From: Macrostomum hystrix
Lineage: Eukaryota; Animalia; Platyhelminthes
Assembly: GCA_950097015.1 (NCBI GenBank)
Contig: CATNEN010000003.1
Coordinates: forward strand, 1,798,001 to 1,862,000
DNA: 64,000 bases
Reading direction: 5' to 3'
The notes beneath the pieces are model-generated. The model was not told the origin of the DNA. It saw only the letters and a program-made list of their open reading frames with translations, and searched no databases. Every line of letters starts with the position of its first letter. Position 1 is the first letter of the stretch. The position numbers were made by a program, and so were the translations under genes. This document shows, piece after piece, positions 1-53,532 of the stretch.

Positions 1-181
1 AGAGTTGGGAGGCTCGGGAAAGAAATTGCGTAAAAGATGCAGTGAGTAATTCTTCAGTACAAGAGTGTTAAAGGCTAGGGCAATGAGCATTCAGCCTTTG
101 TATGGGGGTGTGGGGGGCAAAGCCCCCCACAATTAATAACTCTGCCTTTGCAGCCCATCTCTTTGCACTGGGTACAGCTAG
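1..181 (+). repeat. Left terminal inverted repeat (inner part only)
   Basis: 1-181 is the reverse complement of 16455-16635; one mismatch seen (position 36). Confidence 0.95.
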
Positions 182-453: not shown

Positions 454-573
454 GTGGGGTGTGGCGTCCAATCCTACTTACCTACATATCTAGTCTGAGC
501 TCCATCACAGGACAAACACCCACCCCAACTCTAGCCAATCAGAATCGAGCACACATTTTGGATGGTATATAAG
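454..573 (+). promoter_or_regulatory. Putative Pol II promoter of the first Polinton gene: 58-bp conserved block (454-511), CCAAT (535-539), TATATAAG (566-573)
   Basis: Motifs about 80 bp upstream of ATG 653; the 58-bp block recurs inverted at 15862-15919. Confidence 0.6.
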
Positions 574-652: not shown

Positions 653-1390
653 ATGGACATCTGCGACGGTTATAAGATTCAGGTTCAAGAGTACGAAGGC
701 TTGAAGTACATAGCGATAAGAAAGTTCTACCGCCACGGCAGCACTGCAAGTCTGAAACCTGGCGTCCCTGGCTTCAACCTGAATGTTTGCCAATGGGAAA
801 AGCTGAAGCAACTGAAGCGGTCGCTCGTAGTGTCTGCTCTCAAAAGCGAGTGCAAGGTGGTGAAACTAGGTTTTGATAAGTTTATCGAAGTCAGGGACGG
901 CATCATCTGGCTCAAGCGGCTGCCTGAGGACTGCTGCGAGGAATTCATGAAGCGTAACGCCGTACCGCTGACCCCACCGCTGTGGAAGAAGCTGTGGCAC
1001 AACGCATCATGGATAGACGGCCAGCTGTCGGCTCCCTTCAAGGACATGCGGACGAAGTACGAGCTGGAGTCAGATGAGGAAGAGCAGGACACGAAGCCCG
1101 TCCTGGAGGCCGAGAGATCTGAAGGCAATGGTGGAGACGGAGACGAGATCGGCTCGCCTAGAATGCTGCAGATCGACACCGAGGCTGCCACATCCACGCC
1201 GCTTCCCCTGGCTAGCGCTGGGGATGGACGGATCCCGTCTCGGGACTCGGACTTGCGGGAGGACCCGGTGTGGTACCAGTTCCGGGCGGCTGCGGCTGCG
1301 GCGGCCAGCGGTAGCAGGAAGCGCAAACAGCCGTTTCCACTTCGTCGGCAGGAGGCAATGAAGCTTACCAGGCTGCACTTCGATGAGTGA
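653..1390 (+). CDS. PC4/Sub1-like ssDNA-binding coactivator protein; probable second degenerate PC4 repeat; acidic low-complexity tail
   Basis: IQVQEYEGLKYIAIRKFY...LKPGVPGFNLNVCQWEKLKQ resembles the PC4 core VSVRDFKGKVLIDIREYW...[20 protein letters not shown]. Confidence 0.8.
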   Translation: MDICDGYKIQVQEYEGLKYIAIRKFYRHGSTASLKPGVPGFNLNVCQWEKLKQLKRSLVVSALKSECKVVKLGFDKFIEVRDGIIWLKRLPEDCCEEFMKRNAVPLTPPLWKKLWHNASWIDGQLSAPFKDMRTKYELESDEEEQDTKPVLEAERSEGNGGDGDEIGSPRMLQIDTEAATSTPLPLASAGDGRIPSRDSDLREDPVWYQFRAAAAAAASGSRKRKQPFPLRRQEAMKLTRLHFDE

Positions 1391-1647
1391 CTGAACAGTG
1401 TGCTCTAATGCATCTGACTGCTTTTGTGCTCAAATCAGCTGCTCAATTTGTAATTTTGACAGTGTTAAAAGCCAGCTACTTAATGTTTTTTCCCATTTAT
1501 TCAGTGTTCACAATTGCTTCTGCATTTTTATGGTGCTGGTTGTTTTTCGACGCCGGTCGATTTTCTGTTACAGTGAATTACAAAAAACCTAAGAAAATGA
1601 ATTGCTCATGCTAGAGAAAGCAAGCCTTGCTTCGTTCTAAACTGGTC

Positions 1648-2715
1648 ATGGAGAAAATTTACTTTAACCCTGCTCAACCAGCCAGCTTTTCCAGTGCCTC
1701 AAAATTGCAGCATGAAATGAGAGAAAGAGGTGGTCGTGAGACCACTAAGAGCATAGAGCAGTGGCTGTGTGAGCAGCCAGTGCACACATTACACAAGCCA
1801 GCTAGAAGGCGATACCCAAGAGCACCAATCATAGTGCGATCCATTGACGATCAATGGGAGCTTGACTTGGTTGAGATGATTCCATTCGCAAAGTACAATA
1901 ATGGCTACAAGTACATTCTCACATGCATTGATGTGCTGTCCAAATGTGCATGGGCCAGGCCATTGAAAAATAAATCAGCTGCAGAAGTGAAGTCCGCATT
2001 CGAGAGCATTCTGAAATACTCAAAACGCCAGCCTCGCACAGTCCGCACAGATCAGGGGAAAGAGTTTCTCAACACTACTTTTCGCCAATTCTGCATAGAG
2101 CGGGGGATTCTGGCTTTCCCAACCAATAGTGAGCAGAAAGCAGCCATCATTGAGCGATGGAACAGAACTCTGAAGAGCAAAATGTGGCGGTATTTCACGT
2201 ACAAAAGCACCCTGCACTGGGTTGACGTGCTGTCCAAGCTAGTGAAGTCCTACAACAGCACTTACCATAGAAGCATAAAAATGGCGCCAACAAGCGTCTG
2301 CAAAGATAATGAATCTGAGGTCTGGATGAACCTGTACGATGGGAAAGCAATTGAGACAATAGAGAAGCTGAAGAAGCCGAAATTCTGCGACAATCAGTTA
2401 GTGAGGATTTCCAATGCACCCAGGGTGTTCCGAAAGGGCTACAAGGCCAACTGGAGCGAGGAAGTGTACACTGTGGTGGCCAGGGCCCCGAAGCACTACC
2501 CGTACATGTACAAGATTAGAGACATGAAGGGGGAAGAGATTCGAGGCCTCTTCCATGAGCATGAGCTGCAGGCTGTTCCGGACTCACAGCGGTTGTATGT
2601 GATTGAAAAGATTTTGAAGACTGAGAAACGTCATGGAAAAATCCGATATCTTGTGAAGTGGGCCGGCTACAACTCCACCGGGTGGGTGGATGAAAAGGAC
2701 TTAAGAAAAGTCTAG
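1648..2715 (+). CDS. Polinton retroviral-like (rve) DDE integrase with C-terminal chromodomain
   Basis: WELDLV, TDQGKEF and IIERWNRTLK catalytic motifs; YVIEKIL...YLVKWAGY...W chromodomain; first ATG at 1648. Confidence 0.95.
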   Translation: MEKIYFNPAQPASFSSASKLQHEMRERGGRETTKSIEQWLCEQPVHTLHKPARRRYPRAPIIVRSIDDQWELDLVEMIPFAKYNNGYKYILTCIDVLSKCAWARPLKNKSAAEVKSAFESILKYSKRQPRTVRTDQGKEFLNTTFRQFCIERGILAFPTNSEQKAAIIERWNRTLKSKMWRYFTYKSTLHWVDVLSKLVKSYNSTYHRSIKMAPTSVCKDNESEVWMNLYDGKAIETIEKLKKPKFCDNQLVRISNAPRVFRKGYKANWSEEVYTVVARAPKHYPYMYKIRDMKGEEIRGLFHEHELQAVPDSQRLYVIEKILKTEKRHGKIRYLVKWAGYNSTGWVDEKDLRKV

Positions 2716-2752
2716 TAGTAAACCTATTTCTGTGATAAAGGTATTTTCTATT

Positions 2753-3568
2753 ATGAGAAACATTGTTATCAACAGTGAACATGCTGAAGGTACTTCTAGT
2801 GACTTTCATTTTCACCTGCCTTCACCTATTTACTTGGATCGAAATGTGGACTATGAGGCAGGTCTGGTTGAAATCCATCTGCCTGCTTCATGGTACAATC
2901 TTGACGAACCTTACTGCGTCACTATCTCAGTTGGAAGAGAGCACGAGGCCCTGGTTCTTCAACCTGGACGCTTTGCTAGAGTGGAGGAGCTGGTGGAGTG
3001 CCTGAATGAGCTGTTGGCCAACTCTGAGTCTCTGTTCTTTGATGCGAGGAGCGACAGAGATGCTGAAATGGAGGCTGATGAATCAGGTCTGCTGGGACGT
3101 CGCGGTGATGCTAGGGACTTTGGAATAAAAATTGACATTCAAAACTCGAGAACAGTAGTGCAGAACAACACAGTGCAGGCAGAGCTGCATCTTCCGCCTA
3201 GCAAGATTCTGCAATGGCTTGGATTCAGCAACCAGGGATCAGTGAAAGTTCGACCTGGGCGGCTTGTCTCAGAGCGCTGCATCGGCTGCCCGCGCACCAA
3301 TCTGATTAATGTGCACTGCAGCATCGTTGAGTCGAGCAATTGCAACGGCAACTCACTGCTGAGAACAGTTCGAATGAAACCTGATGCAGAATGGGGAAAC
3401 TATCTGAGCCAAGTGTTTAAGAAAACCATCTTCTTTCCAATTCCGAGGATCAATTTTTTACACAGCCTTCGAGTTCAACTGCGAGATATTTTTGGTAGCC
3501 TTCTGGCCGCTCAGTCCTGCAGTCCCGTTCTGCTGACAGTTCAGATTCGGGAGAAAAGAATTCAATGA
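2753..3568 (+). CDS. Minor capsid (penton-like) protein
   Basis: N-terminal SDFHFHLPSPIYL..YEAGLVEIHLPASWYN and C-terminal INVHCSIV..S..LLRTV..SLRVQLRD..G patterns typical of Polinton minor capsid proteins; position after integrase. Confidence 0.8.
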   Translation: MRNIVINSEHAEGTSSDFHFHLPSPIYLDRNVDYEAGLVEIHLPASWYNLDEPYCVTISVGREHEALVLQPGRFARVEELVECLNELLANSESLFFDARSDRDAEMEADESGLLGRRGDARDFGIKIDIQNSRTVVQNNTVQAELHLPPSKILQWLGFSNQGSVKVRPGRLVSERCIGCPRTNLINVHCSIVESSNCNGNSLLRTVRMKPDAEWGNYLSQVFKKTIFFPIPRINFLHSLRVQLRDIFGSLLAAQSCSPVLLTVQIREKRIQ

Positions 3569-3945
3569 ATTACCAGCAGCTTATTCGGCAGTATTCGGGT
3601 GCGCGAACTGGCAAGCAGCCTGCACTGTACGGCTGCGGGAGCTCACCGGGACTCATGACGTTCCAGCCCCCATCGACTGCTCCATCAACGCTAGCTGCTG
3701 CTGGTCTCCCCAATGCTAAAAACTCTTCTATGCAATCAAAACGAAGGAAAAGAAAGTTGAAAAAAAGTAATAGTAATCATTGCAAAGACAACAAGATAAA
3801 GAAGAGCAGATCAAGAAGGAAGCAGAAAAGTTCAAGCAGGAAAAAGCTTAAGAAGAAGAGAACTGGGAAGAGCAAGAAAGCAACAAGAAGGAAGCGAAAA
3901 GTCAGCAGCAAAACTGTGAAGCGCGTACTGGACTCTCTGTCATAG
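3565..3945 (+). CDS. Small highly basic (K/R/S-rich) putative virion core / DNA-condensing protein
   Basis: Very basic C-terminal half; lies between the two capsid genes; LYGCG fits the adenain site (M/L/I)xGx|G. Confidence 0.6.
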   Translation: MNYQQLIRQYSGARTGKQPALYGCGSSPGLMTFQPPSTAPSTLAAAGLPNAKNSSMQSKRRKRKLKKSNSNHCKDNKIKKSRSRRKQKSSSRKKLKKKRTGKSKKATRRKRKVSSKTVKRVLDSLS

Positions 3946-3948
3946 ACA

Positions 3949-5232
3949 ATGGCTTACGGATTCAACCCCAGGCTCGACCTGTTCAAGACACCTGTGCTGC
4001 AGACTTGCATTGAGAAATCTGCCTATGTTGACATTCATCCTGTGAATTCCATTGTCGCAAACTCACCCATTGAATTTGACTGCCACCAATCAGCTGATGA
4101 GTACACCGATTTAGTTAACTCATTTCTCTACATTCGGTGCCGCATTGTGAGACTGAATGGAGCATTGATGAGGGAGGATGAGCTGGGTGAGGATGGAGTT
4201 GTTGCAGACCGCAGAGACAGCAATGTGCATCCGGAAAATTTTGTTCTATCTACAGCCTTCTCAGATGTAATTGTTAGCATTAACCAGCGAATCGTCTCTG
4301 GGGGTGACCAGCTGTACCCGTACCATGCCTACTTCAAAGCACTGATGAGCTCATCAGATGCCCAGCAACTCAAATTTCACCCTGCCGGTTTCCTGGAACC
4401 CGACTCAGCTGATGAGGACCACACTGAGAACCACAGGACCTCCCAATGGAGGGAATATGCGGGACCACTCCTTAGCGACATTTTCCAGTGCCCTGTGTTT
4501 CTGCTGAACAATTTGCACCTGCACATCAAACTGGTGCCCAGTGATGGAGCATTTGGAATCAGAGCTCCAGCCGCCAACAACACCGCCTACAGGATGGAAA
4601 TATCGCACTGCATCCTCTATCTCCGCCGAGTCAAAGTTCTGCCCCACATCAGCTTGGCTCACGAGCAGGGGCTGGCTAATCAGAATGCGCTCTACCCAAT
4701 TGAGCGAACTGAAATGCAAAACTTCATCCTGCCCCAGGGAATTCAGTCAAAAAATATTGAAGGATTCACGCACGGAAAGCTCCCGAAATTCATCATGCTG
4801 GCCTTCGTCAACCACCGAGCCTTCAATGGGCACCATCATTCCAGCCCGTTCCAGTTCCAAAACTTCAACCTGAGTCAGCTTGCTCTCAAGAAAGGGGGTG
4901 AATCCATGTGCCACGGGGCATTTACACCTGAGAACAATTCGTTTGTGAGAGAGTATTTGCACTACCTGAAAAGCTGTCAATCTGCGAGCCACACCAACTC
5001 GGTTCCATCGATTCCCTACCAGCTCTTCTCAAACGAGAACACAGTGTTCGCATTCGATCTGACACCCGAGGGAGCGGCTCTGTGGTACGGGCAGAAGGAG
5101 GGAAACCTGCGGCTGGAGATTCGGTTCCGACAGGCCTTGGATGAAGCCGTGTCCCTGATTGTCATGTGTGTGTATGACTCACTGATTGAGGTCACCAAGC
5201 ACAGGGAGCTATTGCTGGATTATTCATCTTAA
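3949..5232 (+). CDS. Major capsid protein (double jelly-roll, hexon-like)
   Basis: LDLFKTP..QT.IE...P....PIEF...Y.DL..S.LY start, NPF-like SPFQFQNFNL, FAFDLTP and GNLRLEIRF..AL motifs of Polinton MCPs; 427 aa. Confidence 0.9.
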   Translation: MAYGFNPRLDLFKTPVLQTCIEKSAYVDIHPVNSIVANSPIEFDCHQSADEYTDLVNSFLYIRCRIVRLNGALMREDELGEDGVVADRRDSNVHPENFVLSTAFSDVIVSINQRIVSGGDQLYPYHAYFKALMSSSDAQQLKFHPAGFLEPDSADEDHTENHRTSQWREYAGPLLSDIFQCPVFLLNNLHLHIKLVPSDGAFGIRAPAANNTAYRMEISHCILYLRRVKVLPHISLAHEQGLANQNALYPIERTEMQNFILPQGIQSKNIEGFTHGKLPKFIMLAFVNHRAFNGHHHSSPFQFQNFNLSQLALKKGGESMCHGAFTPENNSFVREYLHYLKSCQSASHTNSVPSIPYQLFSNENTVFAFDLTPEGAALWYGQKEGNLRLEIRFRQALDEAVSLIVMCVYDSLIEVTKHRELLLDYSS

Positions 5233-5777
5233 TGAAAGTTGATATGGATGCCCTTCAGCTGCGTTCTCTTGCTAGATCCTTCCTGCTCAACAATCGAATC
5301 TTGATAGTCACCCTTTGCTTAAAGCAAAAGACCTGGATAATAAACTGGGATGAAGGAAGAATGCGTGAGAAAATTCCCAATCACAACAGAATCATCAGCT
5401 TCTTCTTGATAAAACACAGCGTCTCGTTTGGACACTGGGTTGCATGTTTTGTTGACAATGGAAATGTAGTTGAATTATTTGATTCTCTCGGTTGGAATGC
5501 ACAGACTCTGAATGCCATCCACCAATTTTTTGCTAATAAATTCAAGTTTCCTTTCCGCATGCTTTGCAATGTTAACCGAATCCAATGCAGTCAGTCGGAC
5601 AAGTGCGGACTTTTCTGTCTCTATTTTGCATATCAAAGAATTGTTTTGAAGCGATCATTCGAATGGATTCTGCGAAATCTACACGTGAAAGAAAACTGCC
5701 CGTTGAATGACAGAATGCTTTGTCAGTTTGAAGCCAGCTTAAGAAAAAGAGGTTTATGGCGAAAAAGAAATAGTTGA
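5232..5777 (+). CDS. Adenain-like cysteine maturation protease
   Basis: GHWVA (His), ELFDSLG (Glu/Asp), IQ...CGLFCLYF (Gln/Cys) catalytic motifs. Confidence 0.9.
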   Translation: MKVDMDALQLRSLARSFLLNNRILIVTLCLKQKTWIINWDEGRMREKIPNHNRIISFFLIKHSVSFGHWVACFVDNGNVVELFDSLGWNAQTLNAIHQFFANKFKFPFRMLCNVNRIQCSQSDKCGLFCLYFAYQRIVLKRSFEWILRNLHVKENCPLNDRMLCQFEASLRKRGLWRKRNS

Positions 5778-5794
5778 AATAAAGCCTAAGTGAG

Positions 5795-6442
5795 ATGGAG
5801 TCAGAAAGAGTGTACTATGATGTCCGCCTGCGACAGGGCAGCTGCATGATGGTCTGCGGACCCACCAATGCTGGAAAGACAACCTTCGTGAAGCATCTAA
5901 TACAGTACAGGGATGTATTATTCGACATCCAGCCTGGGAGAGTGCTCTGGTACTATGGGATCGCACAGCCAGCGCATGCAGAGCTGAGCAGTCTTGGTGT
6001 GCAATTGCATCAGGGATTACCCACTAACTTTGAGAGCTCATTGATGAGCAATGATCTGGTCATTTTTGATGACATGATTGATGAAACTTCTAACTCTGCT
6101 TCAATGCGAAATATTTTCACTGGACTCGCCCATCACCTGCCATGCTTTCTTGTAATGCTCACTCAGAATATGTTTTTCAAGGGCAAGGAGTTGCGGACCA
6201 TGAGCTTGAACACGATGTACTATGTGATCCTTAAAAACCCCAGAGACCAGCTGCAGATCGCTGCATTGGGCAGGCAGTGCTTTCCAGAGAAGCCTGGCTT
6301 CCTGCTTGAGGTGTTCAAGCATGTCACAGCGCAGGGCAGGGGGAGCTACCTGTTTCTGGACTTTCACCCTTGCACTCCCGATGAGCTGCGAGTACGAGCC
6401 AGAATTCTGCCCAATCAGAGGCCACATCTGGTTTATGCTTAA
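5795..6442 (+). CDS. A32/FtsK-HerA-like DNA packaging ATPase
   Basis: Walker A GPTNAGKT, Walker B LVIFDD, HH...LTQN and RTMSLN...KNPRD motifs. Confidence 0.93.
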   Translation: MESERVYYDVRLRQGSCMMVCGPTNAGKTTFVKHLIQYRDVLFDIQPGRVLWYYGIAQPAHAELSSLGVQLHQGLPTNFESSLMSNDLVIFDDMIDETSNSASMRNIFTGLAHHLPCFLVMLTQNMFFKGKELRTMSLNTMYYVILKNPRDQLQIAALGRQCFPEKPGFLLEVFKHVTAQGRGSYLFLDFHPCTPDELRVRARILPNQRPHLVYA

Positions 6443-6485
6443 GAATATAGGTTGAGAAATGCTATTAGCCTGAATTATTGCAACT

Positions 6486-6809
6486 ATGGAAGTGTTCGAA
6501 GCTCATCAAAGTTTATTTGAAGTCCTTGCCTCTCCCAAATATACAATTAGCCTCAAGCGCGCAATAATAAAGCTGAGTCCGAAAGAAGCTTGCACTTTTC
6601 TTGTCGAGGCCTGTTACAACCTATTGAAAGAGAATTTGCCATTTTCTCTTGTTGAAAAGACAGCGCTATTGAAATCTAAAAATATAATCCGCAGGATTCC
6701 CCGGCAAAGAAAACAGAGTGACTTACTCAAAGCTTCTTTTATCAGAATCCTCCCCACTCTGCTGAAACTTGTGAAAAAGAAGAGGAAAAGAGATGCACAA
6801 ATTCAATGA
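6486..6809 (+). CDS. Small Polinton-type protein of unknown function (possibly structural)
   Basis: In the packed cluster after the ATPase; the RAIIK...EACYNLLKENLPFS..K..L..K..IR pattern resembles a recurrent Polinton ORF. Confidence 0.55.
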   Translation: MEVFEAHQSLFEVLASPKYTISLKRAIIKLSPKEACTFLVEACYNLLKENLPFSLVEKTALLKSKNIIRRIPRQRKQSDLLKASFIRILPTLLKLVKKKRKRDAQIQ

Positions 6810-7452
6810 GATGGTTCTGATCTCAAGGTCCGAGTATGAAATGCTGAGGAGGAGTGCCAAGACCATTGAGTCTGTGAGTGACACGGCCATAAAGCAGGCA
6901 CAGATGAAATGTGATGATATCCTGTTGGCCCAAGACTGCCCAGATGATATGAAGACAGCCCTGTACCAGAGTGCCATGAAGAGCTTGCTGTCAAAGCGAA
7001 AGCAGGCAGGGAAGGAAACTGCATCTGAAGACAAGAAAGCGAAGATGGTGAAAGCTGAGACGCCACTAAGGAGCTGGGAAGAAAAGATCTGCCAGTCAGT
7101 GCCACAGAAGTTCAAACCCAGGGCTCGCAGTCTATGGGCCATCCTATCTGGCACCGAGTCTGCCATCCGTGTGTCCGATAATGGGGAGGTGAATATTTCT
7201 GGGAACTTGATCCCTGCCTCAAACATAGTGGATTTAATTCTGCACACAGTGAAGGACTCAAAAAGTTCCAGTGAGCCTGTGGGATGGGCTGCTTTCAGTG
7301 ACTTGCTTCGTCAAAAGAATCTCAATGTGCCAATGTCAGCCGTAGGAAAATCTGTACAAAAAGAAATTCTGGAGTCAATTGAGAGCAAAGACGCACAGCC
7401 TTCAACCAAAGGACTGGGCAGCAAGTCTGCGTGGCTGAGGTTGAATAGGTGA
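6793..7452 (+). CDS. Polinton-type protein of unknown function
   Basis: SVP..K.RA..L, DNGEV.I.G..IP.SNIVDLI and P.GW..F...L...NVP.S.VG pattern recurrent in Polintons. Confidence 0.6.
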   Translation: MHKFNEMVLISRSEYEMLRRSAKTIESVSDTAIKQAQMKCDDILLAQDCPDDMKTALYQSAMKSLLSKRKQAGKETASEDKKAKMVKAETPLRSWEEKICQSVPQKFKPRARSLWAILSGTESAIRVSDNGEVNISGNLIPASNIVDLILHTVKDSKSSSEPVGWAAFSDLLRQKNLNVPMSAVGKSVQKEILESIESKDAQPSTKGLGSKSAWLRLNR

Positions 7453-7516
7453 AGAAAAAGTATTTAAGAAAGGCAGCACAGTCGAATTCTGCTGGTTTTA
7501 AGGCACCCGCTTGAGC

Positions 7517-8353
7517 ATGAACTACATAGACATTCAAGGCTTCCCGTGTGATGGAGAGAATGATAACTTCATCGTGAAGGAGCTGGCAGTCCTCGAAGTA
7601 AAAAAGGGAAGCTACCACATTTCCCACCATGTGTACGCCCCACCGCATCCGTGGGAGAGAGTGTCACCCGACATGCGAATGTACTACAGTCAGCTCACGA
7701 AACATCAGCATAAATTCAAGTGGAGTGATGGAAGCCGGCCGTATTTTCAATTGGCCGATGACATTGTGAGCATTGGAGGCGGAGTCACTTGGACAAGCGG
7801 AGAGGAAAAATCTATTTTTCTGACTGAGCTGCTAGGCAGACAGGTATTCAACCTAGACGATCTGAGCTCACCTTCCACCAAGGAGTCAGCTAGCGGCTGT
7901 GCTGTGAGAAATGCATTGCTGTACTACAGTTGGCTAAGGCCAAAGTTCTGCATCAGCTTAAGAAGCGAGCAGTGTCCATGGCACAAGAGTTTCAGCGACA
8001 TCAGCAGTCAAAGTATTCAAAATGAGTGCAGGAACCACAACACTGAGTGTCACCAACCTGGTTGGCGGAGTGGATCTGAAACTGGTTGGAGGCAGGGGCG
8101 CCCAGCTGCCTCTAAGAGAACTGGCTCTCAGCATGGCGCATGTGATCTACCGACCCGTTTGGCCCCGGGTGCTCATCAAGCAGATGCGAAATCCCAGGAT
8201 AACTCTGCTGCTCTACCCCACTGGGCAACTGAGCATCTGTGGCGCCAAGAGCTACGCAGACGCGGCCAGGGCTGCCCGTCGCTTCGTGGCTATGCTGCAT
8301 CGCAGAGTGCCGGTTCAACTGCTGCCTCCTCAATCCATTTGTGTTCGAATTAA
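7517..8353 (+). CDS. DEDD/DnaQ-like exonuclease-fold protein (N-terminal about 145 aa); 3' part overlaps the TBP-like ORF
   Basis: YIDIQGF..FIVKELAVL..PP.PW..H...WSDG..Y..CAVRNA; motif I reads DxQ rather than DxE. Confidence 0.55.
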   Translation: MNYIDIQGFPCDGENDNFIVKELAVLEVKKGSYHISHHVYAPPHPWERVSPDMRMYYSQLTKHQHKFKWSDGSRPYFQLADDIVSIGGGVTWTSGEEKSIFLTELLGRQVFNLDDLSSPSTKESASGCAVRNALLYYSWLRPKFCISLRSEQCPWHKSFSDISSQSIQNECRNHNTECHQPGWRSGSETGWRQGRPAASKRTGSQHGACDLPTRLAPGAHQADAKSQDNSAALPHWATEHLWRQELRRRGQGCPSLRGYAASQSAGSTAASSIHLCSN

Positions 8354-8585
8354 AACTATTACTGCAAAGGGCAACCTGGACTTATGCGGTGCTTTATCGC
8401 TGTCTGATTTGCGCAACATTCTACCCAGCGCAACTTATGAACCTGAATCGTTTTCTGCTTTAATCTGTAAACTTCCCTTTTGCAAATGTTTGCTTTTCCA
8501 TAACGGCTCATTTGTTCTCAGTGGAGCTCGCTCTCTGCGACAATTGCATTCTGATGTTGAGCATCTAGCAGCTCTCATCAAGTGA
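8022..8585 (+). CDS. Divergent TATA-binding protein (TBP)-like protein, core domain only
   Basis: Two internal repeats aligning with TBP: TNLVG..L..LAL..Y.P..RNPRITLLLYPTGQLSICGAKSYADAARAARRF and YEPESFSALI..CLLFHNGSFVLSGARS; AATAAA at about 8597-8606. Confidence 0.9.
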   Translation: MSAGTTTLSVTNLVGGVDLKLVGGRGAQLPLRELALSMAHVIYRPVWPRVLIKQMRNPRITLLLYPTGQLSICGAKSYADAARAARRFVAMLHRRVPVQLLPPQSICVRIKTITAKGNLDLCGALSLSDLRNILPSATYEPESFSALICKLPFCKCLLFHNGSFVLSGARSLRQLHSDVEHLAALIK

Positions 8586-9054
8586 CTTGAATTATAAATA
8601 AATAAATGTCTGTGAAAGCCTGAGCAGTGGATCCGCTTTGAATTCAATGTAATATTTGGAAGAATAGAAGCCAAATTAAAATTTCGCAGACTTCTTTTTT
8701 TAATGCAAGCAAAGAGTACGGTAAGTTCATGCATACATTCCACTAACACACAGAAAATACGAGCTTACTCCATCCATCGCTCGTCGCATAAAAGACAACA
8801 AAAATAGAAAAATATGAAAAATAGAAAAATCAATTCCCACCACCTCATCAATTGACTTTGAAAAATTTTAATTGCAGCGGAATTCTTTCATAAATATAAA
8901 AATACAAAATACAAGAAGACCAAATACAAGACGACAACTCACACAATGTCTTCAGATAGCATAATAAGCACAAATACAAAGGATGATTTCATTTAAAAGC
9001 ACTCAAACTGAATCCTGTCCAACTAGCACGCAGAATATTCACTGGTGAATTGCT

Positions 9055-12000
9055 TTACGCCTTCGGCTGCTTTGCATCTCGTCCCGACAAGCTAGGTGGT
9101 AGCAGGACTCGCTTCCTGGTCGTAGTAGCATTTAGATGATTCCAGAGGTTGACATGGCCGAACGGAAGGCTGACATTCGACGAAGTCCACGCTCTCTTGT
9201 CCTCCCACATTGTCAACGCCTTCTTCACCTGCTCGATCGTGTACACTTCATGCCTGACGCTGCTGATTCGTCGGACAGTCACATTGAGCTGAGTGAGGCA
9301 GTGATAGGCAGCAGCAAAGTCTTCATGCGTGATGGCACGCTTCACGACGGCCTTCTGTACGCCCTTGGCCGTCTTCTTGTCTGGTAAAGTCGACTCCTGC
9401 GCACTCTTGAACGAGTACAGTTTAGGCTTCAGAAGAATCCACTCTTTGTAGATGGAACCAGCAGATTCATCTTTGATGCAGCCCAGTCGAGCCTTCAAGC
9501 CGTCAGATCGAAGCGGATGCTGAATCGGGTAGTTAGACGTGTCCAACAGACCTCTGTCAATCATAGTGGGCAGCATGTGCTTCTGGACATCGATGTTTTT
9601 CACGCACAGAAATAGAGAATCTGTGTCACCACCGCAAAGTTGAATCTTGGCAGCACTGGAAGTCAACTCAAACCACGGCTTCAGTTTTTCGTAGAAGAGA
9701 GCGTACATGATGAGCTTTGACAAATCGAGTACGCATTGTCCGATGTACACAGGCCGATCGAGGCGCACAGAAGTCTTGTTAAGTTGGAAGACGGACAGAT
9801 TCTCCTTGATGATGCTGAACTCTTTCAGATTCGGCTTTGAGGCGAGCACTTGGGCCTGATGGTCACCGTTGCAAATTCTGACATCCCTTCGCTTCCGAAC
9901 ATTCTCCATTGTCTTTCCGAATAGGCTGTTGTTTTTGCTCTTGTAGTAGTTCTTTTCAAACTCAGTGCTTGCCCTTGAGCGCTTCTCGCTATTGCTGTCT
10001 ATGTAGCTCTTGAAAACCTGCTCCTGTCGAAAGCTAATTGCCTTTCGAAATGCAAGGACTCGCATCCCTTGCTGTAGGTAGAACTTGAGCACTCTACTGT
10101 GCACAACATAAGCTTCTTTGTCTAGACATGTGAGCAGCAGCTTTTGTGCACCATTATACTTCTTGTTCGGATTCAGCTGGAGCCAGAGTTGCTGCATGTA
10201 AGCAGGGAAATCCTCGAAAGCAACGGTTCCCTTCTCAGGTGCTAGCGGCAGCTCTTCAGTCCGCTGGTGAATAGAGTCCGGATAGTGCAAGTCTACTTCG
10301 ATCAGATAAGCATGAGAAGCGTCATCTTGTAGGTTGAGGATGGTGCTCTCGTTCCACTGTTGTAGCTCATCGGACTCAATCCACTTGAAATCACTCACTG
10401 GCAGCGGCATGGACAGTGCTTGACCATAGAGATTATTGACATCCAAAGGCAGCAGATACCTCGTCTCTTCATCATCAGCACTGCTGCTTGAGCACACCTG
10501 ATGCACGTTCGTAAAGGTCATTCCTCCGCGGATTCCAGCTTCAAACATCCGGTACATGTCTCCATCAACAAGAAGCTCCAAGCGGCGCCTTGCGCACTTC
10601 AGCGCTGATTCAAACGACAGTCCTGGAGCAGTGATGAAGTGAACGGGATCCAGGCCATCGTCAGCAAGGCTCAGTCTCCTGAATGACTCAAAGGCGTCGG
10701 CCAATTGACGAATGTCCAGTTCGAGGTAGGACATCATGTACTCGCCAAGGTCTTTGACCTGTAGCTCGCGCCACGCTTGTTTTGCGTGCTCATAATCTGC
10801 GTCTGAGCAGAACGATTGTGTGAGCACATTGAAGAAGCTCTCTTGTGATGGTAGCTCCGTCACATGCAAATCCGAGGGCCGCTTGACAAAGTCATAGGGA
10901 AAAACCCCTTTACTGAGAAGAATGTTGTTAGATAGCAACGGCCGATGCAGCTTCATCTCGAGTGTAAGCGGACAGCTGTCAGCATTCAAAGTGCACATCA
11001 CAGTCTCCAGACTGCAGCCTAGAAAGTTTAGAGAATCCAGAAACTGAATGGTGAAATTCACGGGTCGCTTTTTACCAGATGGTAGTGTGAATTCGCCCAC
11101 TTGAAACTCAACTTTCAGGCACATGTAGCGCTCGCTCGTCTGTGGAATCACGCTCATCTTCCAGTGCTCCATCTTGCACAGTGCCGTTGAAAAAATCAAG
11201 TGTAGATCATAGCAGCTGAGATTGTGGAAGTACACAGGCAAAAAGCGTCGATTCAGCTGAGCCTTCATATTGCATTCCGCGCAAGCAGCACCTCGGAAAA
11301 GCCCAGTGAGATGATCGTGATCCCAATGCTTATCAGGCCCACTTTTGAAGAGATGAGAGCAGTAGCAGCAAACCTGTGCGCCTTCAAACTTTCTTGTTGC
11401 TTCATCATTCACAATCTTCTTCTGATAGCTGTGCTCCCGGTTCCAAAAGTAGACTTCCCGTGCGAGCACCTCAAGCGAACGCAGAAATCGCTCAACGCAT
11501 AAATCCGGATCGTCTTCTCGGAAAAGTTGCAGACTCTGGCTTCCTTGCTTGAGTCTTGGACCCACACTGTCTCCCTTTTGAACTAGGAGGTAGCCAATTG
11601 CGGCCGGAACGTGCTGTGACAGCTTTCGAAGACGACCAGCTTCTTCAGGTTCGTCATTGACACTGGAATTGAAAGACTCAATGTCTGCATAGACTACAAA
11701 TGGTGGTGAAATTGTCTTCTGCCAGCTACCAAAAGCAAGGATGTTGTTTGTCTCTGTCGGCAAAATCTCCTTGACAACGCAATCATCTGACTGATAGCAG
11801 CCCCTGCGATGTTCTTGCAGTCTCTCCTCTGACCTGAAGGCGGACAAGCAGCGCTCGCACCATTTGCGCTGATGAAGGCCGTCTTTGCTGTTGAGTAGGC
11901 GATTCAGACTCACAACAGCGCACCAGTGAGCACTGCCTGACTTCTCATCAACAAGGTACAGCAGAGGCAGCAAGCGCCTTCCGGCTGCGGTTATCGCCTT

Positions 12001-12717
12001 AGGCTGACGCAGAACCTCCACCTTACCAGCACGCCAAGTTAGTACTGCGAAGCAGATGCCTGGATTCAGCATCTCCAACTTGTCCAGTGCATTTAGGCTC
12101 ACGGGAAATGCTACGCCTTCTACGTTGAGCTCATGCAGCCACGGCCGGTATGTTGCAAGCGCCTGCGGAGATTTGCGCAAGGTCTCCTCACCGTGGTGCA
12201 GCAGCGCTAGGCAGGCATACAGGAAGCAGTTGTTGCCATCACTCGGCGGGTTAATTACAGCGTGCTTTTGCTTCAGTCCGCTTGGGAGCACAAAGTTGCT
12301 GCTTCTACCGATATAATAGCGCACACGATCTCCACGAGAGATGCAAATGTCAAAATAATTAATCCTGTCTATTATCCAACCACTACCATTGGTGTTCATG
12401 AATTCACAGGTTCTTTCACATGCAGCCAGCTGAGCATTCCACCATTCTTCGAAACTCCATATCTCCTCCAGGCAACTGCTGATCCACTTGTCTTCTTCAG
12501 CCACAAATTCGCAAGCCTGCCTTCTCTTCATATGGATGTTCAGACGCAGCTGCGCGCGCAAGATGACATTGGCCTGCTGCCGCTTGGTGATTGCGTCTTC
12601 TATCACGCTCCTGCACTGCCGCACCATGTCGAAGATATTCAGCTGCTGCTCCATGCGACTCGCGCTGACCCGGTGAACCTCTAGAACACCTTCATGAGCA
12701 GTGGCGTGTAGACTCAT
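9055..12717 (-). CDS. Protein-primed family B DNA polymerase (main exon) with N-terminal terminal-protein/vOTU-like region, Zn finger and inserted endonuclease VII/HNH-like domain
   Basis: Exo motifs YADIE, FHNLSCYD, YLELD; pol motifs DVNNLYG, KNNSLFGK, GDTDS; DGNNCF...HW; CxxC...DHDHLTG.FRG.AC..CN. Confidence 0.96.
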   Translation of the reverse strand: MSLHATAHEGVLEVHRVSASRMEQQLNIFDMVRQCRSVIEDAITKRQQANVILRAQLRLNIHMKRRQACEFVAEEDKWISSCLEEIWSFEEWWNAQLAACERTCEFMNTNGSGWIIDRINYFDICISRGDRVRYYIGRSSNFVLPSGLKQKHAVINPPSDGNNCFLYACLALLHHGEETLRKSPQALATYRPWLHELNVEGVAFPVSLNALDKLEMLNPGICFAVLTWRAGKVEVLRQPKAITAAGRRLLPLLYLVDEKSGSAHWCAVVSLNRLLNSKDGLHQRKWCERCLSAFRSEERLQEHRRGCYQSDDCVVKEILPTETNNILAFGSWQKTISPPFVVYADIESFNSSVNDEPEEAGRLRKLSQHVPAAIGYLLVQKGDSVGPRLKQGSQSLQLFREDDPDLCVERFLRSLEVLAREVYFWNREHSYQKKIVNDEATRKFEGAQVCCYCSHLFKSGPDKHWDHDHLTGLFRGAACAECNMKAQLNRRFLPVYFHNLSCYDLHLIFSTALCKMEHWKMSVIPQTSERYMCLKVEFQVGEFTLPSGKKRPVNFTIQFLDSLNFLGCSLETVMCTLNADSCPLTLEMKLHRPLLSNNILLSKGVFPYDFVKRPSDLHVTELPSQESFFNVLTQSFCSDADYEHAKQAWRELQVKDLGEYMMSYLELDIRQLADAFESFRRLSLADDGLDPVHFITAPGLSFESALKCARRRLELLVDGDMYRMFEAGIRGGMTFTNVHQVCSSSSADDEETRYLLPLDVNNLYGQALSMPLPVSDFKWIESDELQQWNESTILNLQDDASHAYLIEVDLHYPDSIHQRTEELPLAPEKGTVAFEDFPAYMQQLWLQLNPNKKYNGAQKLLLTCLDKEAYVVHSRVLKFYLQQGMRVLAFRKAISFRQEQVFKSYIDSNSEKRSRASTEFEKNYYKSKNNSLFGKTMENVRKRRDVRICNGDHQAQVLASKPNLKEFSIIKENLSVFQLNKTSVRLDRPVYIGQCVLDLSKLIMYALFYEKLKPWFELTSSAAKIQLCGGDTDSLFLCVKNIDVQKHMLPTMIDRGLLDTSNYPIQHPLRSDGLKARLGCIKDESAGSIYKEWILLKPKLYSFKSAQESTLPDKKTAKGVQKAVVKRAITHEDFAAAYHCLTQLNVTVRRISSVRHEVYTIEQVKKALTMWEDKRAWTSSNVSLPFGHVNLWNHLNATTTRKRVLLPPSLSGRDAKQPKA

Positions 12718-12954: not shown

Positions 12955-13200
12955 AATTAATTGATCGATTAATTGATTGATTGGTTGATTTATTGGTTGA
13001 TTTAATGATAGATGATTGATAAATTGATTGATGATTGATTGACTGATAAATTTATAAATTGATAAATTGATAAATTGATAAATTGATAAATTGACTGATT
13101 GATTGATGATGGATTAGTTGATCGATCGATTGTTTGACTGATTGACTGATTGATTGGTTGATTGGTTGGTTGATTGATTGATTGAGTGATTAATTGATTG
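12955..13200. repeat. Degenerate (ATTG)n microsatellite in the putative polB intron
   Basis: Visible attg/gatt runs between acceptor 12726 and donor 13242. Confidence 0.85.
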
Positions 13201-13242
13201 AGAACTTCTGAAAGAATATCTGAAATCGCTTCGTTAACTCAC

Positions 13243-13609
13243 CTGCAAGTTGTGCATCACCGCCACTATGATTGTTGTCGCTGTTCACAGAACGCCCATT
13301 ATTGCTCGATTGTATAGCACCTTCTTGCCAGGAGCTGTCGACTTCCTGCCAGGAGTGCTCTTCTTGCAGCCAGGAGTGCTCTTCTTGCAGCCAGGAGTGC
13401 TCTTCTTGCAGCCAGGAGTGCTCTTCTTGCAGCCAGGAGTGCTCTTCTTGCAGCCAGGAGTGCTCTTCTTGCAGCCAGGAGTGCTCTTCTTGCAGCCAGG
13501 AGTGCTCTTCTTGCAGCCAGGAGTGCTCTTCTTGCAGCCAGGAGTGCTCATCATCATCATCACCAGATGAGTGCTCTGTCTCGAGGTGAGAGCTATGATT
13601 ATTTCTAGA
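13243..13609 (-). CDS. Putative upstream exon of the polB transcript containing a 21-bp tandem repeat
   Basis: TTTTTCCAG acceptor at 13612-13610, CAG|GTGAGT donor at 13243/13242, TTTTTCCCCTCAG acceptor at 12726; the phase-1 join is in frame with polB. Confidence 0.55.
13349..13549. repeat. 21-bp tandem repeat CCAGGAGTGCTCTTCTTGCAG, 9 full copies plus a partial
   Basis: Directly visible perfect repeats. Confidence 0.95.
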
Positions 13610-14408
13610 CTGGAAAAATAGCAGCATAAACTGAGACGTAAGAATTCAAATGTGCGTAGCATGAGATATCGTGGTGATAATGAAAGGCACTCCAAAATAT
13701 ATCTCAAGTGATGAGTTCGAGCTCTATTTAAGAGTTTGAGTACAGCATCAGTTTCTCATAAGAAATCTATATCTGTCTAAATGTTTGCCGATTTTTTCGA
13801 GCCCAGGAAGTTTGAGGCAAAGTTTGAGTCCACCAGATTTACCTGCCTGCTAAGTAGTAATTTTCTGTTTAAAGACTTAGAACGAACTTAAATAAACGCC
13901 CAAATCCAGACATCAGATCCATCTATACAATTTCCAATGGACTGCTTAGATTTTTGCACATGAAAGGAAAAATAATAATCATTCCATCTTATATTCTGAC
14001 ACTGAACCATCACCGCTTCGTAAATATATTTATTTCAGTAGTATAGCAAATTAGCTAAGTAAAAAATAAGAAACAACCTCGGAAAAACTTTAACAATCGC
14101 GCAAATTATCGAGTACGGAATAAAAATACACAACACGCTTGATTAAGGTTGAAGAAATTGCATAAATGAGAATAGAAAATCAACATTGGCAGGCATGGGT
14201 AAATTGCTAATGTTCTGTCCTTAAAGGCTTCCAAACGACTGATACTAGAGTAGGAAAAATGGAAGCTACTATTTCCATTGAATATTCTGTTGTGCTGATA
14301 AAAGATTGCTAGGATTAAGCAAAAAATAAAGACCAAAAAGAAAGCCTTAAATTCCAGCAAGCATAGGCCCGAAGTTCAAATGAAGCATGCTCTCAGCATC
14401 CGAATACA

Positions 14409-17607: not shown

Positions 17608-17780
17608 TCCAGCCATTGCCTGCATGGGATTTGGGAAAATTTTGGGATAAGCGACTTACACGGAGCCCCAGCCATTGCCTGCATGGGATTTGGGATAATT
17701 TGGGGATTAGTGACTCTCACGGAGCTCCAGCCATTGCCTGCATGGGATTTGGGATAATTTAGGGATTAGCGACTCCCACA
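17608..17780. repeat. 59-bp tandem repeat (about 3 units) containing the splice acceptor of copy A
   Basis: Repeated CCAGCCATTGCCTGCATGGGATTTGGG. Confidence 0.85.

Positions 17781-48992: not shown

Positions 48993-53532
<4,540 letters not shown>

What the first reader, a model, noticed from the sequence alone, without database searches (positions are those of the whole stretch)
653..8585. Polinton carrying a candidate private transcription-initiation module (TBP-like plus PC4-like)
Seen: the rightward gene block opens with a PC4/Sub1-like gene and closes with a TBP-like gene, both intact and inside the TIRs. Known: TBP nucleates preinitiation complexes and PC4 is a Pol II coactivator that binds melted promoter DNA; neither belongs to the canonical Polinton core (pPolB, INT, ATPase, protease, MCP, minor capsid), and the element encodes no RNA polymerase. 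Inference: the element may redirect host Pol II to its own promoters (e.g. an early-to-late switch for capsid genes) or poison host initiation. I cannot confirm from here whether this pairing has been described.
Basis: partly seen in the sequence, partly recalled or inferred. Interest (0 to 1): 0.92.

Follow-up and report, generated by a model that had tools for sequence, protein, structure and literature searches.

The report
Flatworm Polinton with TBP and PC4 genes
An apparently intact virus-like transposon (Polinton) in a flatworm-type genome really does carry its own divergent TATA-binding protein and a PC4-domain protein, but that the two work together as a private transcription switch is not shown.

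Summary
A Polinton with 181-nt inverted ends (1-181 / 16455-16635, 99%) opens its rightward block with a PC4-domain gene (653-1390; Pfam PC4 27.8 bits, cut-off 25). It closes the block with a two-repeat TBP gene (8022-8585; Pfam TBP 82 bits). The TBP-like model has pLDDT 96 and TM 0.83-0.86 to solved TBPs. Both genes have conserved relatives, all from Macrostomum lignano or unnamed read assemblies. M. lignano gene models link the TBP-like gene to Polinton genes.

The TBP-like family is an isolated long branch. All 6 of 6 members replace the first-repeat phenylalanine pair (to Pro and Tyr). They keep the second-repeat pair and the acidic stirrup.

PC4-like evidence is by sequence only, because its model failed (pLDDT 39). 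It could equally be a replication single-strand-binding protein.

The genes lie 6.6 kb apart in separate units, so a "module" is inference. One paper's figure legend lists "TBP" in a related virus map. Four searches pairing TBP or PC4 terms with Polinton, adintovirus or Mavericks found no Polinton PC4 gene or TBP+PC4 pairing. Verdict: partly supported; a new variant of a known kind; interest 0.55.

The parts
1..181 (.). Left terminal inverted repeat; the window begins on its first base
   Evidence: 181 nt, 99% complementary to 16455-16635
535..573 (+). Promoter-like stretch before the PC4-like gene: CCAAT (535-539) and GTATATAAG (565-573). The TATA hit starts 87 nt before the ATG at 653.
   Evidence: It is 1 of only 2 GTATWTAAG matches in 64 kb. 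Function is inferred.
653..1390 (+). PC4-like gene, 245 aa. It has a conserved N-terminal 126 aa (PC4 domain at residues 8-53, nt 674-811), a variable acidic middle and a conserved basic C-terminal tail.
1627..2715 (+). Integrase: rve core plus a C-terminal chromo-like domain
   Evidence: rve 52.9 bits; Chromo 23 bits, below its cut-off of 25.1
2732..3568 (+). ORF of 278 aa, unassigned. It is a candidate minor capsid gene by position only. It is a single ORF with 0 interruptions seen.
   Evidence: no family match. The assignment is recalled Polinton gene order, not a test.
3565..3945 (+). ORF of 126 aa, very basic and low in complexity
   Evidence: weak low-complexity matches only
3949..5232 (+). 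ORF of 427 aa, unassigned. It is a candidate major capsid gene by position only. It is a single ORF with 0 interruptions seen.
   Evidence: no Pfam or PDB sequence match. A stretch like its C-terminus heads the M. lignano gene model P0011.
5232..5777 (+). Adenovirus-type cysteine protease
   Evidence: Peptidase_C5 21.1 bits, cut-off 21.3, E 0.00028
5795..6442 (+). P-loop ATPase, a candidate packaging ATPase
   Evidence: Pox_A32 E 0.009, FtsK_SpoIIIE E 0.068, Walker-A-type matches; all below cut-offs
6486..7452 (+). Two ORFs of unknown function: 6486-6809 (107 aa) and 6793-7452 (219 aa)
   Evidence: The N-terminus of the 219-aa ORF recurs next to TBP-like sequence in the M. lignano models P0011 and P0162.
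7460..7468 (+). Second GTATWTAAG box (GTATTTAAG), 57 nt before the ATG at 7517
7517..8353 (+). ORF of unknown function with a conserved N-terminal stretch of about 160 aa. Its last 332 nt overlap the TBP-like ORF in another frame.
   Evidence: no Pfam or PDB match. The homologous N-terminus is in M. lignano P0010.
8022..8585 (+). TBP-like gene, 187 aa. Repeat 1 covers residues 10-93 (nt 8049-8300). Repeat 2 covers about residues 106-185 (nt 8337-8576).
8597..8606 (+). Two overlapping AATAAA hexamers, starting 12 nt after the TBP-like stop
   Evidence: function inferred
9055..12717 (-). Protein-primed type B DNA polymerase, 1220 aa, with an Endonuclease VII-like segment at residues 447-484
   Evidence: DNA_pol_B_2 75.1 bits; Endonuclease_7 28.9 bits (cut-off 23.6)
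13190..13627 (-). ORF of 145 aa built on a perfect 21-nt tandem repeat (13348-13549, 9.6 copies)
14409..15473 (-). ORF of 354 aa of unknown function, with a Cys-rich N-terminus and Ala/Ser-rich repeats
16455..16635 (.). Right terminal inverted repeat

Best explanation
This is a young, apparently intact Polinton/Maverick in the genome of a Macrostomum-type flatworm. Besides the core genes, its lineage has kept two accessory genes of cellular ancestry.

(1) The TBP-like gene encodes a complete two-repeat saddle. I think it most likely works as an element-encoded substitute for the host TATA-binding protein. It would sit on the TATA-like boxes at the starts of the element's transcription units and recruit host TFIIB and RNA polymerase II through its retained C-terminal stirrup. 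Its remodelled first repeat would give it a different DNA preference, or escape from host TBP regulators.

(2) The PC4-like gene encodes a protein that binds single-stranded or melted DNA. It has its own CCAAT/TATA promoter at the left end of the element. It may help promoter opening, support strand-displacement replication by the protein-primed polymerase, or do both.

Shown: the gene structures, the family and fold of the TBP-like protein, the PC4 domain by sequence, conservation in relatives, and the Polinton context of the TBP-like gene in M. lignano. Inferred: DNA binding, partners, timing, and any cooperation between the two proteins.
For: TBP family and fold:
- Pfam 82 bits over two repeats; PDB sequence E 2.6e-15.
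- Model pLDDT 96, pTM 0.87, from an 80-row alignment.
- TM 0.83-0.86 and rmsd 1.6-2.6 A to solved archaeal, human, yeast and plant TBPs.

Conservation of the TBP-like gene:
- 5 word-index hits at 73-82% identity.
- In the exhaustive profile search, 5 proteins reached E <= 1e-30, out of 1540 at E <= 0.001. Three of the 5 are named M. lignano, one is an unnamed Logan protein and one is a metagenome protein.
- Mean pairwise identity among 5 full-length members is 83% in repeat 1 and 64% in repeat 2, against 28% in the N-terminal 9 residues.

Functional sites (yeast numbering recalled):
- 6 of 6 family members keep N69, V71, E186, E188, F190 and F207.
- 6 of 6 change F99 to P, F116 to Y, T124 to C and N159 to T; V161 becomes T in 5 and S in 1.
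- Pro at the F99 position occurs in 0 of 74 other TBP-family sequences.

Context:
- M. lignano gene models put TBP-like sequence next to stretches like this element's ATPase, the 219-aa ORF and the 7517 ORF (P0011, P0162, P0010).

Promoter-like signals:
- GTATWTAAG occurs twice in 64 kb. Both copies are on the + strand inside the element, at 87 and 57 nt before the ATGs of the PC4-like gene and of the ORF that leads into the TBP-like gene.
- TATA-like strings also lie before pPolB and the 354-aa ORF.
- AATAAA follows the TBP-like stop.

PC4-like gene:
- 3 of 4 family members exceed the Pfam cut-off (27.8, 28.3 and 33.3 bits; the fourth scores 21.6).
- Residues aligned to human PC4 F77, R86, W89, K97-P98-G99 and W110 are aromatic or identical, and invariant or conservative in all 4 members (the roles of these residues are recalled).
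Against: - There are no expression, binding or partner data of any kind.
- The motif count is weak and post hoc: 13 of 100 shuffles gave at least 2 matches.
- The boxes look like ordinary TATA boxes that the host TBP could serve, so the need for a private TBP is unexplained.
- Two of the four DNA-kinking phenylalanines are lost, so TATA binding may be weak or absent.
- The TBP-like ORF has no TATA-like box of its own and is overlapped by the upstream ORF, so how it is expressed is unclear.
- The PC4-like model failed (pLDDT 39). Several basic residues of human PC4 (R75, K78, K80, R100, K101 by my count on the alignment) are not kept.
- No PC4-like relative appeared among annotated M. lignano proteins, so the pairing may not be general even in this lineage.
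- The family is very narrow: 3 PC4-like clusters and 5 close TBP-like proteins.
Confidence: 0.5

Rival explanations
1. The PC4-like protein is the element's replication single-strand-binding protein. It would coat the strand displaced by the protein-primed polymerase and has nothing to do with the TBP-like gene. On this reading there is no 'module', only two unrelated accessory genes.
For: - PC4 is described as a 'replication and transcription cofactor'. Phage T5 has a PC4 homologue implicated in recombination-dependent replication (review PMC7549692, passages read; the T5 paper itself was not read).
- The element encodes a protein-primed pPolB and no other recognisable single-strand-binding protein.
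- The aromatic residues aligned to PC4 F77 and W89 are kept.
- The two genes lie 6.6 kb apart in separate units.
Against: - The sequence match is to eukaryotic PC4/Sub1, not to phage proteins. There were 0 PHROG matches, and no T5 chain appeared among the 6 PDB matches at E <= 10.
- The gene sits far from pPolB and on the other strand.
- Its presence beside a TBP gene in one small element is at least suggestive of transcription.
Confidence: 0.3
2. The TBP-like protein is a decoy. It would keep the surfaces that bind host factors (TFIIB and others) but bind DNA poorly, and so would damp or re-route host transcription rather than drive the element's promoters.
For: - In 6 of 6 members the first-repeat Phe pair and three other underside residues are replaced, while the acidic stirrup residues are kept.
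- Pro at the F99 position is unique among the 74 other TBP-family sequences examined.
Against: - N69, V71, F190 and F207 equivalents on the DNA-facing side are kept in 6 of 6 members.
- Repeat 1, the altered half, is the most conserved part at 83% identity. That fits a selected new specificity better than a relaxed surface.
- TATA-like boxes lie at the element's unit starts.
Confidence: 0.1
3. Both genes are passenger copies of host genes picked up by one Polinton lineage and carried without use to the element.
For: - Distribution is narrow: only Macrostomum and unnamed assemblies.
- No PC4-like hit appeared in annotated M. lignano proteins.
Against: - Identity to any cellular TBP is only 23-34%, so this is not a recent capture.
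- Members that differ by 20-47% from the window protein all share the same derived residues.
- Conservation is domain-structured in both proteins.
- Both ORFs are intact in a copy whose TIRs are 99% alike.
Confidence: 0.07

Closest known systems
Cellular TATA-binding protein (TBP; Pfam PF00352; e.g. PDB 1cdw, 1ytb, 1ais, 1mp9)
   Same: It has two tandem repeats and a saddle fold, with TM 0.83-0.86 over about 185 columns. The residues aligned to N69, V71, E186, E188, F190 and F207 are kept (numbering recalled).
   Different: - Identity is only 23-26%.
- The first-repeat Phe pair is replaced by Pro and Tyr, and T124, N159 and V161 are changed.
- There is a 6-residue insertion after strand 1 and a 2-residue shorter second stirrup (alignment).
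- There is no N-terminal extension.
- It is encoded by a mobile element.
- It scores far below every archaeal equivalog cut-off (63.6 against 270 bits).
TBP-like proteins of giant viruses (e.g. Heterosigma akashiwo virus 01, Terrestrivirus, ChoanoV1 and Marseillevirus entries in BFVD)
   Same: They are virus-encoded members of the TBP fold. 52 BFVD matches reached E <= 0.001.
   Different: - The fit is poorer than to cellular TBPs: TMq 0.67-0.75 among the ten best-ranked rows (one further row 0.48), at 10-20% identity.
- By recalled knowledge those viruses carry their own RNA polymerase, and this element has none.
'TBP' gene drawn in a map of MELD viruses with adintovirus-like PolB (Starrett et al. 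2021, PMC8502044, Fig. 5 legend)
   Same: It is a TBP-like gene in a midsize PolB/integrase virus-like element (section 3.4 and its legends were read in full).
   Different: The figure is not held, so I cannot tell which element carries the gene or how similar it is. The section deals with non-animal datasets, no PC4 is mentioned, and the supplements are closed.
Human PC4 / yeast and fungal Sub1 (Pfam PF02229; PDB 1pcf, 4usg, 4bhm)
   Same: It matches the ssDNA-binding C-terminal domain over about 45 residues. It keeps the aromatic pair, the K-P-G turn and the helix tryptophan.
   Different: - The domain is at the N-terminus rather than the C-terminus.
- It is followed by a second conserved block of about 64 residues, an acidic linker and a basic tail.
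- Several basic DNA-contact residues are lost.
- The fold was not confirmed.
Phage T5 PC4 homologue (PDB 4bg7), a replication/recombination ssDNA-binding protein
   Same: It is a virus-encoded PC4-fold protein, and a plausible functional analogue if the gene serves replication.
   Different: No sequence match was found: 0 PHROG families, and it is not among the PDB hits.

Membership tests
Polinton / Maverick | Terminal inverted repeats | tested here: met
   181 nt, 99%
Polinton / Maverick | Protein-primed family B DNA polymerase | tested here: met
   DNA_pol_B_2 75.1 bits, cut-off 25.8
Polinton / Maverick | Retrovirus-like (rve) integrase | tested here: met
   rve 52.9 bits, cut-off 32.6
Polinton / Maverick | Adenovirus-type cysteine protease and packaging ATPase | tested here: inconclusive
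   Peptidase_C5 scores 21.1 against a cut-off of 21.3. The ATPase gives only P-loop-level matches (Pox_A32 E 0.009).
Polinton / Maverick | Double and single jelly-roll capsid genes | tested here: inconclusive
   The two candidate ORFs gave no Pfam match. The larger gave no PDB sequence match.
Polinton / Maverick | Target-site duplication at both ends | not testable with these tools
   The window starts on the first TIR base, so the left flank is absent.
TBP family (PF00352) | Two tandem TBP repeats above the curated score | tested here: met
   82 bits, cut-off 22.9, 2 stretches
TBP family (PF00352) | Saddle fold | tested here: met
   pLDDT 96; TM 0.83-0.86 to solved TBPs
Canonical TATA-binding TBP | Four DNA-kinking phenylalanines (feature recalled) | tested here: not met
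   2 of 4 are kept. The first-repeat pair is Pro and Tyr in 6 of 6 members.
Canonical TATA-binding TBP | Acidic C-terminal stirrup that contacts TFIIB (feature recalled) | tested here: met
   Both Glu are kept in 6 of 6 members. The neighbouring Leu is Ser in 4 of 6.
Canonical TATA-binding TBP | Binding and bending of TATA DNA | not testable with these tools
   No binding data are available.
TBP-related factor 2 / TLF (TBPL1) | Orthology to animal TLF | not tested
   No named TLF came back in any search. The nearest outgroups are unnamed metagenome proteins. The likeness of lost Phe residues with kept factor surfaces is recalled only.
PC4 / Sub1 (PF02229) | Domain match above the curated score | tested here: met
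   The window protein scores 27.8 bits (30.9 for residues 1-62) against a cut-off of 25. 3 of 4 family members pass.
PC4 / Sub1 (PF02229) | Four-stranded sheet plus helix fold, dimeric or tandem | tested here: inconclusive
   The model is poor (pLDDT 39). Its secondary structure suggests strands then a helix, twice. A profile comparison of the two halves found no repeat (probability 0.4%).
PC4 / Sub1 (PF02229) | ssDNA-binding residues (roles recalled) | tested here: inconclusive
   The aromatic pair, R86, the K-P-G turn and W110 equivalents are kept. R75, K78, K80, R100 and K101 equivalents are not.

The most novel reading that the evidence does not exclude
A Polinton lineage of flatworms carries a self-contained promoter-recognition system although it has no RNA polymerase. 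A TBP paralogue with a uniquely remodelled first repeat (Pro and Tyr in place of the Phe pair) would read the element's own GTATWTAAG-type boxes in one orientation. A PC4-derived protein, possibly a single-chain tandem PC4-like domain, would hold the melted promoter open. Together they would let the element start its gene programme independently of the host's TBP supply and TBP regulators. That would make it the smallest known virus-like element with its own general transcription factors.
Probability: 0.2. Interest if true: 0.8.

Novelty: new variant of a known kind. Interest (0 to 1): 0.55.

Why it matters
Virus-encoded TBPs are so far a hallmark of giant viruses, which bring their own RNA polymerase (recalled; the viral fold hits are all of that kind). 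A 16.6-kb nuclear virus-like element without a polymerase that keeps a TBP paralogue under apparent constraint raises a new possibility. Small eukaryotic DNA elements may take over Pol II initiation at the level of a general factor, not only through activators.

The family also offers a natural TBP in which one half of the DNA-binding saddle has been rebuilt while the TFIIB-facing stirrup is kept. That is of interest for how TBP paralogues acquire new promoter preferences.

The PC4-like gene may fill the missing single-strand-binding function of protein-primed Polinton replication. Either role would add to the short list of known Polinton accessory functions.

Tried and rejected
Second PC4 repeat. 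By eye, residues 63-126 of the PC4-like protein look like a degenerate second PC4 unit. No test supported this:
- Pfam found nothing in residues 63-126 alone at E <= 10.
- hhalign of the two halves gave a probability of 0.4%.
- The AlphaFold model was too poor to decide (pLDDT 39).
I keep it only as part of the novel reading.

More PC4-like relatives. A profile search with alignment A2 at E <= 10 returned the same 3 proteins. The length window of that tool (135-429 aa) means that fusions or fragments were not seen. No search was left to try the domains apart.

Origin of the TBP-like gene. A neighbour-joining tree on 80 sequences puts the 6 family members together. Their next neighbours are unnamed proteins from ENA and JGI metagenomes (P0018, P0107, P0151). 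P0018 shares 4 of the 5 derived states. No host TBP, TLF or viral TBP could be named as sister, so the origin stays open.

Other checks that found nothing:
- Phage families: 0 PHROG matches for either protein.
- Archaeal TBP equivalogs: all far below cut-off.
- A second copy in the window: none for 11 non-coat ORFs.
- Rfam: 0 matches in the whole window.
- The ORF at 7517-8020: no Pfam, NCBIfam or PDB match.

Not done:
- dN/dS, because no DNA of sister copies could be obtained.
- The third fold search, because the only remaining model was the low-confidence one.

Literature. Eight searches bear on prior description. One search was badly framed: 582 papers matched, 15 were listed, and none of those was on Polintons. 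Supplements are closed, so the gene tables of Starrett et al. 2021 may hold relevant annotations that I could not see.

Full report
THE ELEMENT

The first 16,635 bases of the window are one Polinton/Maverick. Its ends are inverted repeats of 181 nt at 99% identity (1-181 and 16455-16635). The window begins on the first repeat base, so the left flank and any target-site duplication are out of view.

The + strand block runs from 653 to 8585. It holds:
- the PC4-like gene (653-1390);
- an rve integrase with a chromo-like tail (1627-2715);
- two unassigned ORFs that I treat as candidate capsid genes by position only (2732-3568 and 3949-5232; each is a single ORF with no interruption seen);
- a very basic ORF (3565-3945);
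- an adenovirus-type protease (5232-5777);
- a P-loop ATPase (5795-6442);
- three unknown ORFs (6486-6809, 6793-7452, 7517-8353);
- the TBP-like gene (8022-8585).

The - strand holds a 1220-aa protein-primed polymerase (9055-12717), a repeat-built ORF (13190-13627) and a 354-aa unknown ORF (14409-15473).

None of the genes I read is broken; the count of breaks is 0. No ORF matches an RNA polymerase family. There is no second copy in the window (11 non-coat ORFs tested). The flank carries an innexin gene and MLL-like PHD/FYRN/SET ORFs, so the host is an invertebrate animal and not human. The closest named proteins are from the flatworm Macrostomum lignano.

THE TBP-LIKE GENE

The case here is strong.
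- Pfam TBP scores 82 bits (E 2.8e-23) with both repeats.
- 35 distinct PDB TBP sequences match at E <= 0.01, the best at 2.6e-15.
- I built an alignment of 80 rows. It holds the window protein, 5 family members and 74 of the 150 listed hits, taking those of 214 aa or shorter and dropping longer ones.
- With that alignment AlphaFold gave pLDDT 96 and pTM 0.87.
- Foldseek places the model on solved archaeal, human, yeast and plant TBPs at TM 0.83-0.86, rmsd 1.6-2.6 A and 22-26% identity.
- Giant-virus TBP-like proteins fit less well: TMq 0.67-0.75 among the ten best-ranked rows (one further row 0.48), at 10-20% identity.

An exhaustive profile search of 1.84 billion representatives gave 1540 proteins at E <= 0.001, 104 at <= 1e-10 and only 5 at <= 1e-30. 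The five are one unnamed Logan protein (P0004), three M. lignano gene models, and one metagenome protein of 183 aa at 53% identity. The family is therefore an isolated long branch.

In a neighbour-joining tree of the 80 rows, the nearest neighbours of the family are unnamed metagenome proteins. I cannot say whether the gene came from a host TBP, a TBP-related factor or elsewhere.

WHAT IS KEPT AND WHAT IS CHANGED IN THE SADDLE

I aligned the family to a plant TBP that the search returned (P0013) and to eight other hits. I used yeast numbering from memory for the labels.

All 6 of 6 family members keep N69, V71, E186, E188, F190 and F207. All 6 carry Pro at F99, Tyr at F116, Cys at T124 and Thr at N159. 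V161 is Thr in 5 and Ser in 1.

Among the 74 other TBP-family rows:
- the F99 column holds F 69, L 2, Y 2, C 1 and no Pro;
- the F116 column holds F 65, Y 8, W 1.

By recalled knowledge, the four phenylalanines kink the two ends of the TATA box and the acidic C-terminal stirrup contacts TFIIB. On that reading the protein keeps the half that faces TFIIB and has rebuilt the other half.

The rebuilt half is the best conserved part. Mean pairwise identity is 83% in repeat 1, 64% in repeat 2 and 28% in the first 9 residues. This is over 10 pairs among 5 full-length members, with the 110-aa fragment P0005 dropped. That pattern argues for selection on a new surface, not for decay.

THE PC4-LIKE GENE

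The case here is moderate.
- Residues 8-53 match Pfam PC4 at 27.8 bits, against a cut-off of 25. Residues 1-62 alone score 30.9 bits.
- Of the 4 family members, 3 pass the cut-off (27.8, 28.3, 33.3) and one does not (21.6).
- Human PC4 is the best solved match (E 0.004 for the single sequence, 0.00037 for the profile).
- Counting along the printed alignment, the residues opposite human F77, R86, W89, K97-P98-G99 and W110 are Tyr, Arg, Tyr, Lys-Pro-Gly and Trp. They are invariant or conservative in all four members. Those opposite R75, K78, K80, R100 and K101 are not basic (residue roles recalled).

Conservation is domain-structured. Mean pairwise identity is 80% in residues 1-62, 73% in 63-126, 44% in the acidic middle and 69% in the basic tail (printed before the script stopped).

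The structure prediction failed (pLDDT 39 with 4 rows), so the fold is not confirmed. The poor model's secondary structure shows strands then a helix, twice. This recalls the single-chain 'type I' PC4-like domain described in a review (PMC7549692, passages read). However, neither Pfam nor a profile comparison of the two halves supports a second repeat.

Only three relatives exist at the sensitivity available. All come from unnamed read assemblies, and one sits on a 14.4-kb contig. None is among the annotated M. lignano proteins. The length window of the tool leaves fusions and fragments unseen.

CONTEXT IN RELATIVES

I could fetch no DNA of sister copies. The collections on hand hold no eukaryotic genomes, and I left out the scan of viral contigs (see referred steps). 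What I have is indirect.
- The M. lignano gene model P0011 strings together stretches like this element's 427-aa ORF, ATPase, 219-aa ORF and TBP-like gene.
- P0162 joins the 219-aa ORF's N-terminus to TBP-like sequence.
- P0010 joins the homologue of the 7517 ORF to the TBP-like C-terminal part.

So the TBP-like gene sits in the same Polinton neighbourhood in M. lignano. Whether the PC4-like gene travels with it is unknown.

EXPRESSION SIGNALS (all inferred)

- A CCAAT box (535-539) and GTATATAAG (565-573) precede the PC4-like ATG; the TATA hit starts 87 nt before it.
- GTATTTAAG (7460-7468) lies 57 nt before the ATG at 7517.
- These are the only two GTATWTAAG matches in 64 kb. Still, 13 of 100 shuffles gave two or more, and I chose the pattern after seeing the sites.
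- Similar A/T boxes lie before pPolB and the 354-aa ORF.
- AATAAA follows the TBP-like stop by 12 nt.
- The TBP-like ATG has no box of its own. The ORF from 7517 runs on over it for 332 nt in another frame.

The TBP-like gene may therefore be a second cistron, a processed transcript or something else.

MECHANISM

My best reading has confidence 0.5. The TBP-like protein is an element-encoded stand-in for host TBP. It nucleates Pol II initiation at the element's TATA-like boxes through its kept TFIIB-facing half, and its remodelled other half gives it altered DNA preference or freedom from host TBP regulators. The PC4-like protein binds melted or single-stranded DNA.

Whether the PC4-like protein serves promoters or the strand-displacement replication expected of a protein-primed polymerase cannot be told. 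I give the pure replication reading 0.3. A decoy role for the TBP-like protein gets 0.1 and a passenger reading 0.07. I put the full version of it at about 0.2.

COMPARISON WITH WHAT IS KNOWN

Virus-encoded TBP-fold proteins are well represented among giant viruses.

For Polinton-like elements, the only mention I found is one line in a figure legend of Starrett et al. [quoted passage not shown] I read section 3.4 and its legends in full, and read passages of the preprint. The figure is not held and the supplements are closed.

The literature searches gave the following:
- 'polinton' with 'PC4' found one paper, in which PC4 is a cluster label.
- 'polinton' with 'TATA-binding protein' found five papers. 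I opened one, and its TBP passage concerns mirusvirus-like elements. The other four I know from titles and abstract starts only.
- 'polinton' with 'TBP' found eight papers, seven listed. Only the two versions of the Starrett paper were read for it.
- 'Mavericks' with 'TATA-binding protein' and 'Macrostomum' with 'polinton' found nothing relevant by title.

Within the papers I opened, I found no description of a Polinton PC4 gene, of the pairing, or of this TBP lineage.

VERDICT

This is a new variant of a known kind: a Polinton with an unusual, conserved pair of accessory genes. Interest is 0.55. It is held down by the narrow distribution, by the lack of any expression or co-occurrence data, and by the unconfirmed PC4 fold.

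Noticed in passing
window 7517-8353 (+): An ORF of unknown function runs 332 nt into the TBP-like ORF in another frame. Its N-terminal stretch of about 160 aa is conserved in M. lignano P0010. It has no Pfam, NCBIfam, PHROG or PDB match. Whether the overlap is used is unknown. A 95-aa alternative-frame ORF also lies inside the PC4-like gene, so chance is possible.
   Followed up: partly
window 11266-11379 (-), inside pPolB: The polymerase carries an Endonuclease VII-like segment at residues 447-484. It scores 28.9 bits against a cut-off of 23.6.
   Followed up: no
window 13348-13549: A perfect 21-nt tandem repeat of 9.6 copies at 100% match forms the core of the ORF at 13190-13627. Next to it lies an (ATTG)n tract at 12956-13201.
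   Followed up: no
window 454-511 and 15862-15919: A second, internal inverted pair of 58 nt at 93% identity. One arm lies just upstream of the left-end promoter-like stretch and the other lies upstream of the 354-aa ORF. It may be a shared regulatory piece.
   Followed up: no
window 16816-17118, just outside the right TIR: A 56-nt unit repeated 3 times (16816-16981), followed by two stretches that match the element's own subterminal 328-362 in inverted orientation (17005-17035 and 17084-17118). This looks like the remnant of a related element's end beside this one.
   Followed up: partly
window 17707-18975 (-), 31653-32840 (+), 33224-33973 (+): Two similar PHD/FYRN ORFs lie in opposite orientation, with a SET-domain ORF nearby, in G+C-rich blocks (57-63%) around an A+T-rich stretch. 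This suggests an inverted duplication of an MLL-like gene.
   Followed up: no
window 62378-63517 (+), 47168-48067 (+), 48870-49550 (+): Host-type genes: innexin (305 bits), amine oxidase and a sodium:solute symporter fragment. The innexin marks an invertebrate animal host.
   Followed up: no
protein P0163 (Logan, 282 aa): A longer reading of a PC4-like relative runs upstream of the shared start Met. About 32 codons before that Met, its residues are those a TATATAA-type box would give in that frame. This hints that the promoter box is conserved, but no DNA was available to check.
   Followed up: no
protein P0018 (ENA, 193 aa): A metagenome TBP-family protein at 32% identity shares 4 of the family's 5 derived underside states and is its nearest neighbour in the tree. 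The lineage may therefore reach beyond Macrostomum.
   Followed up: partly
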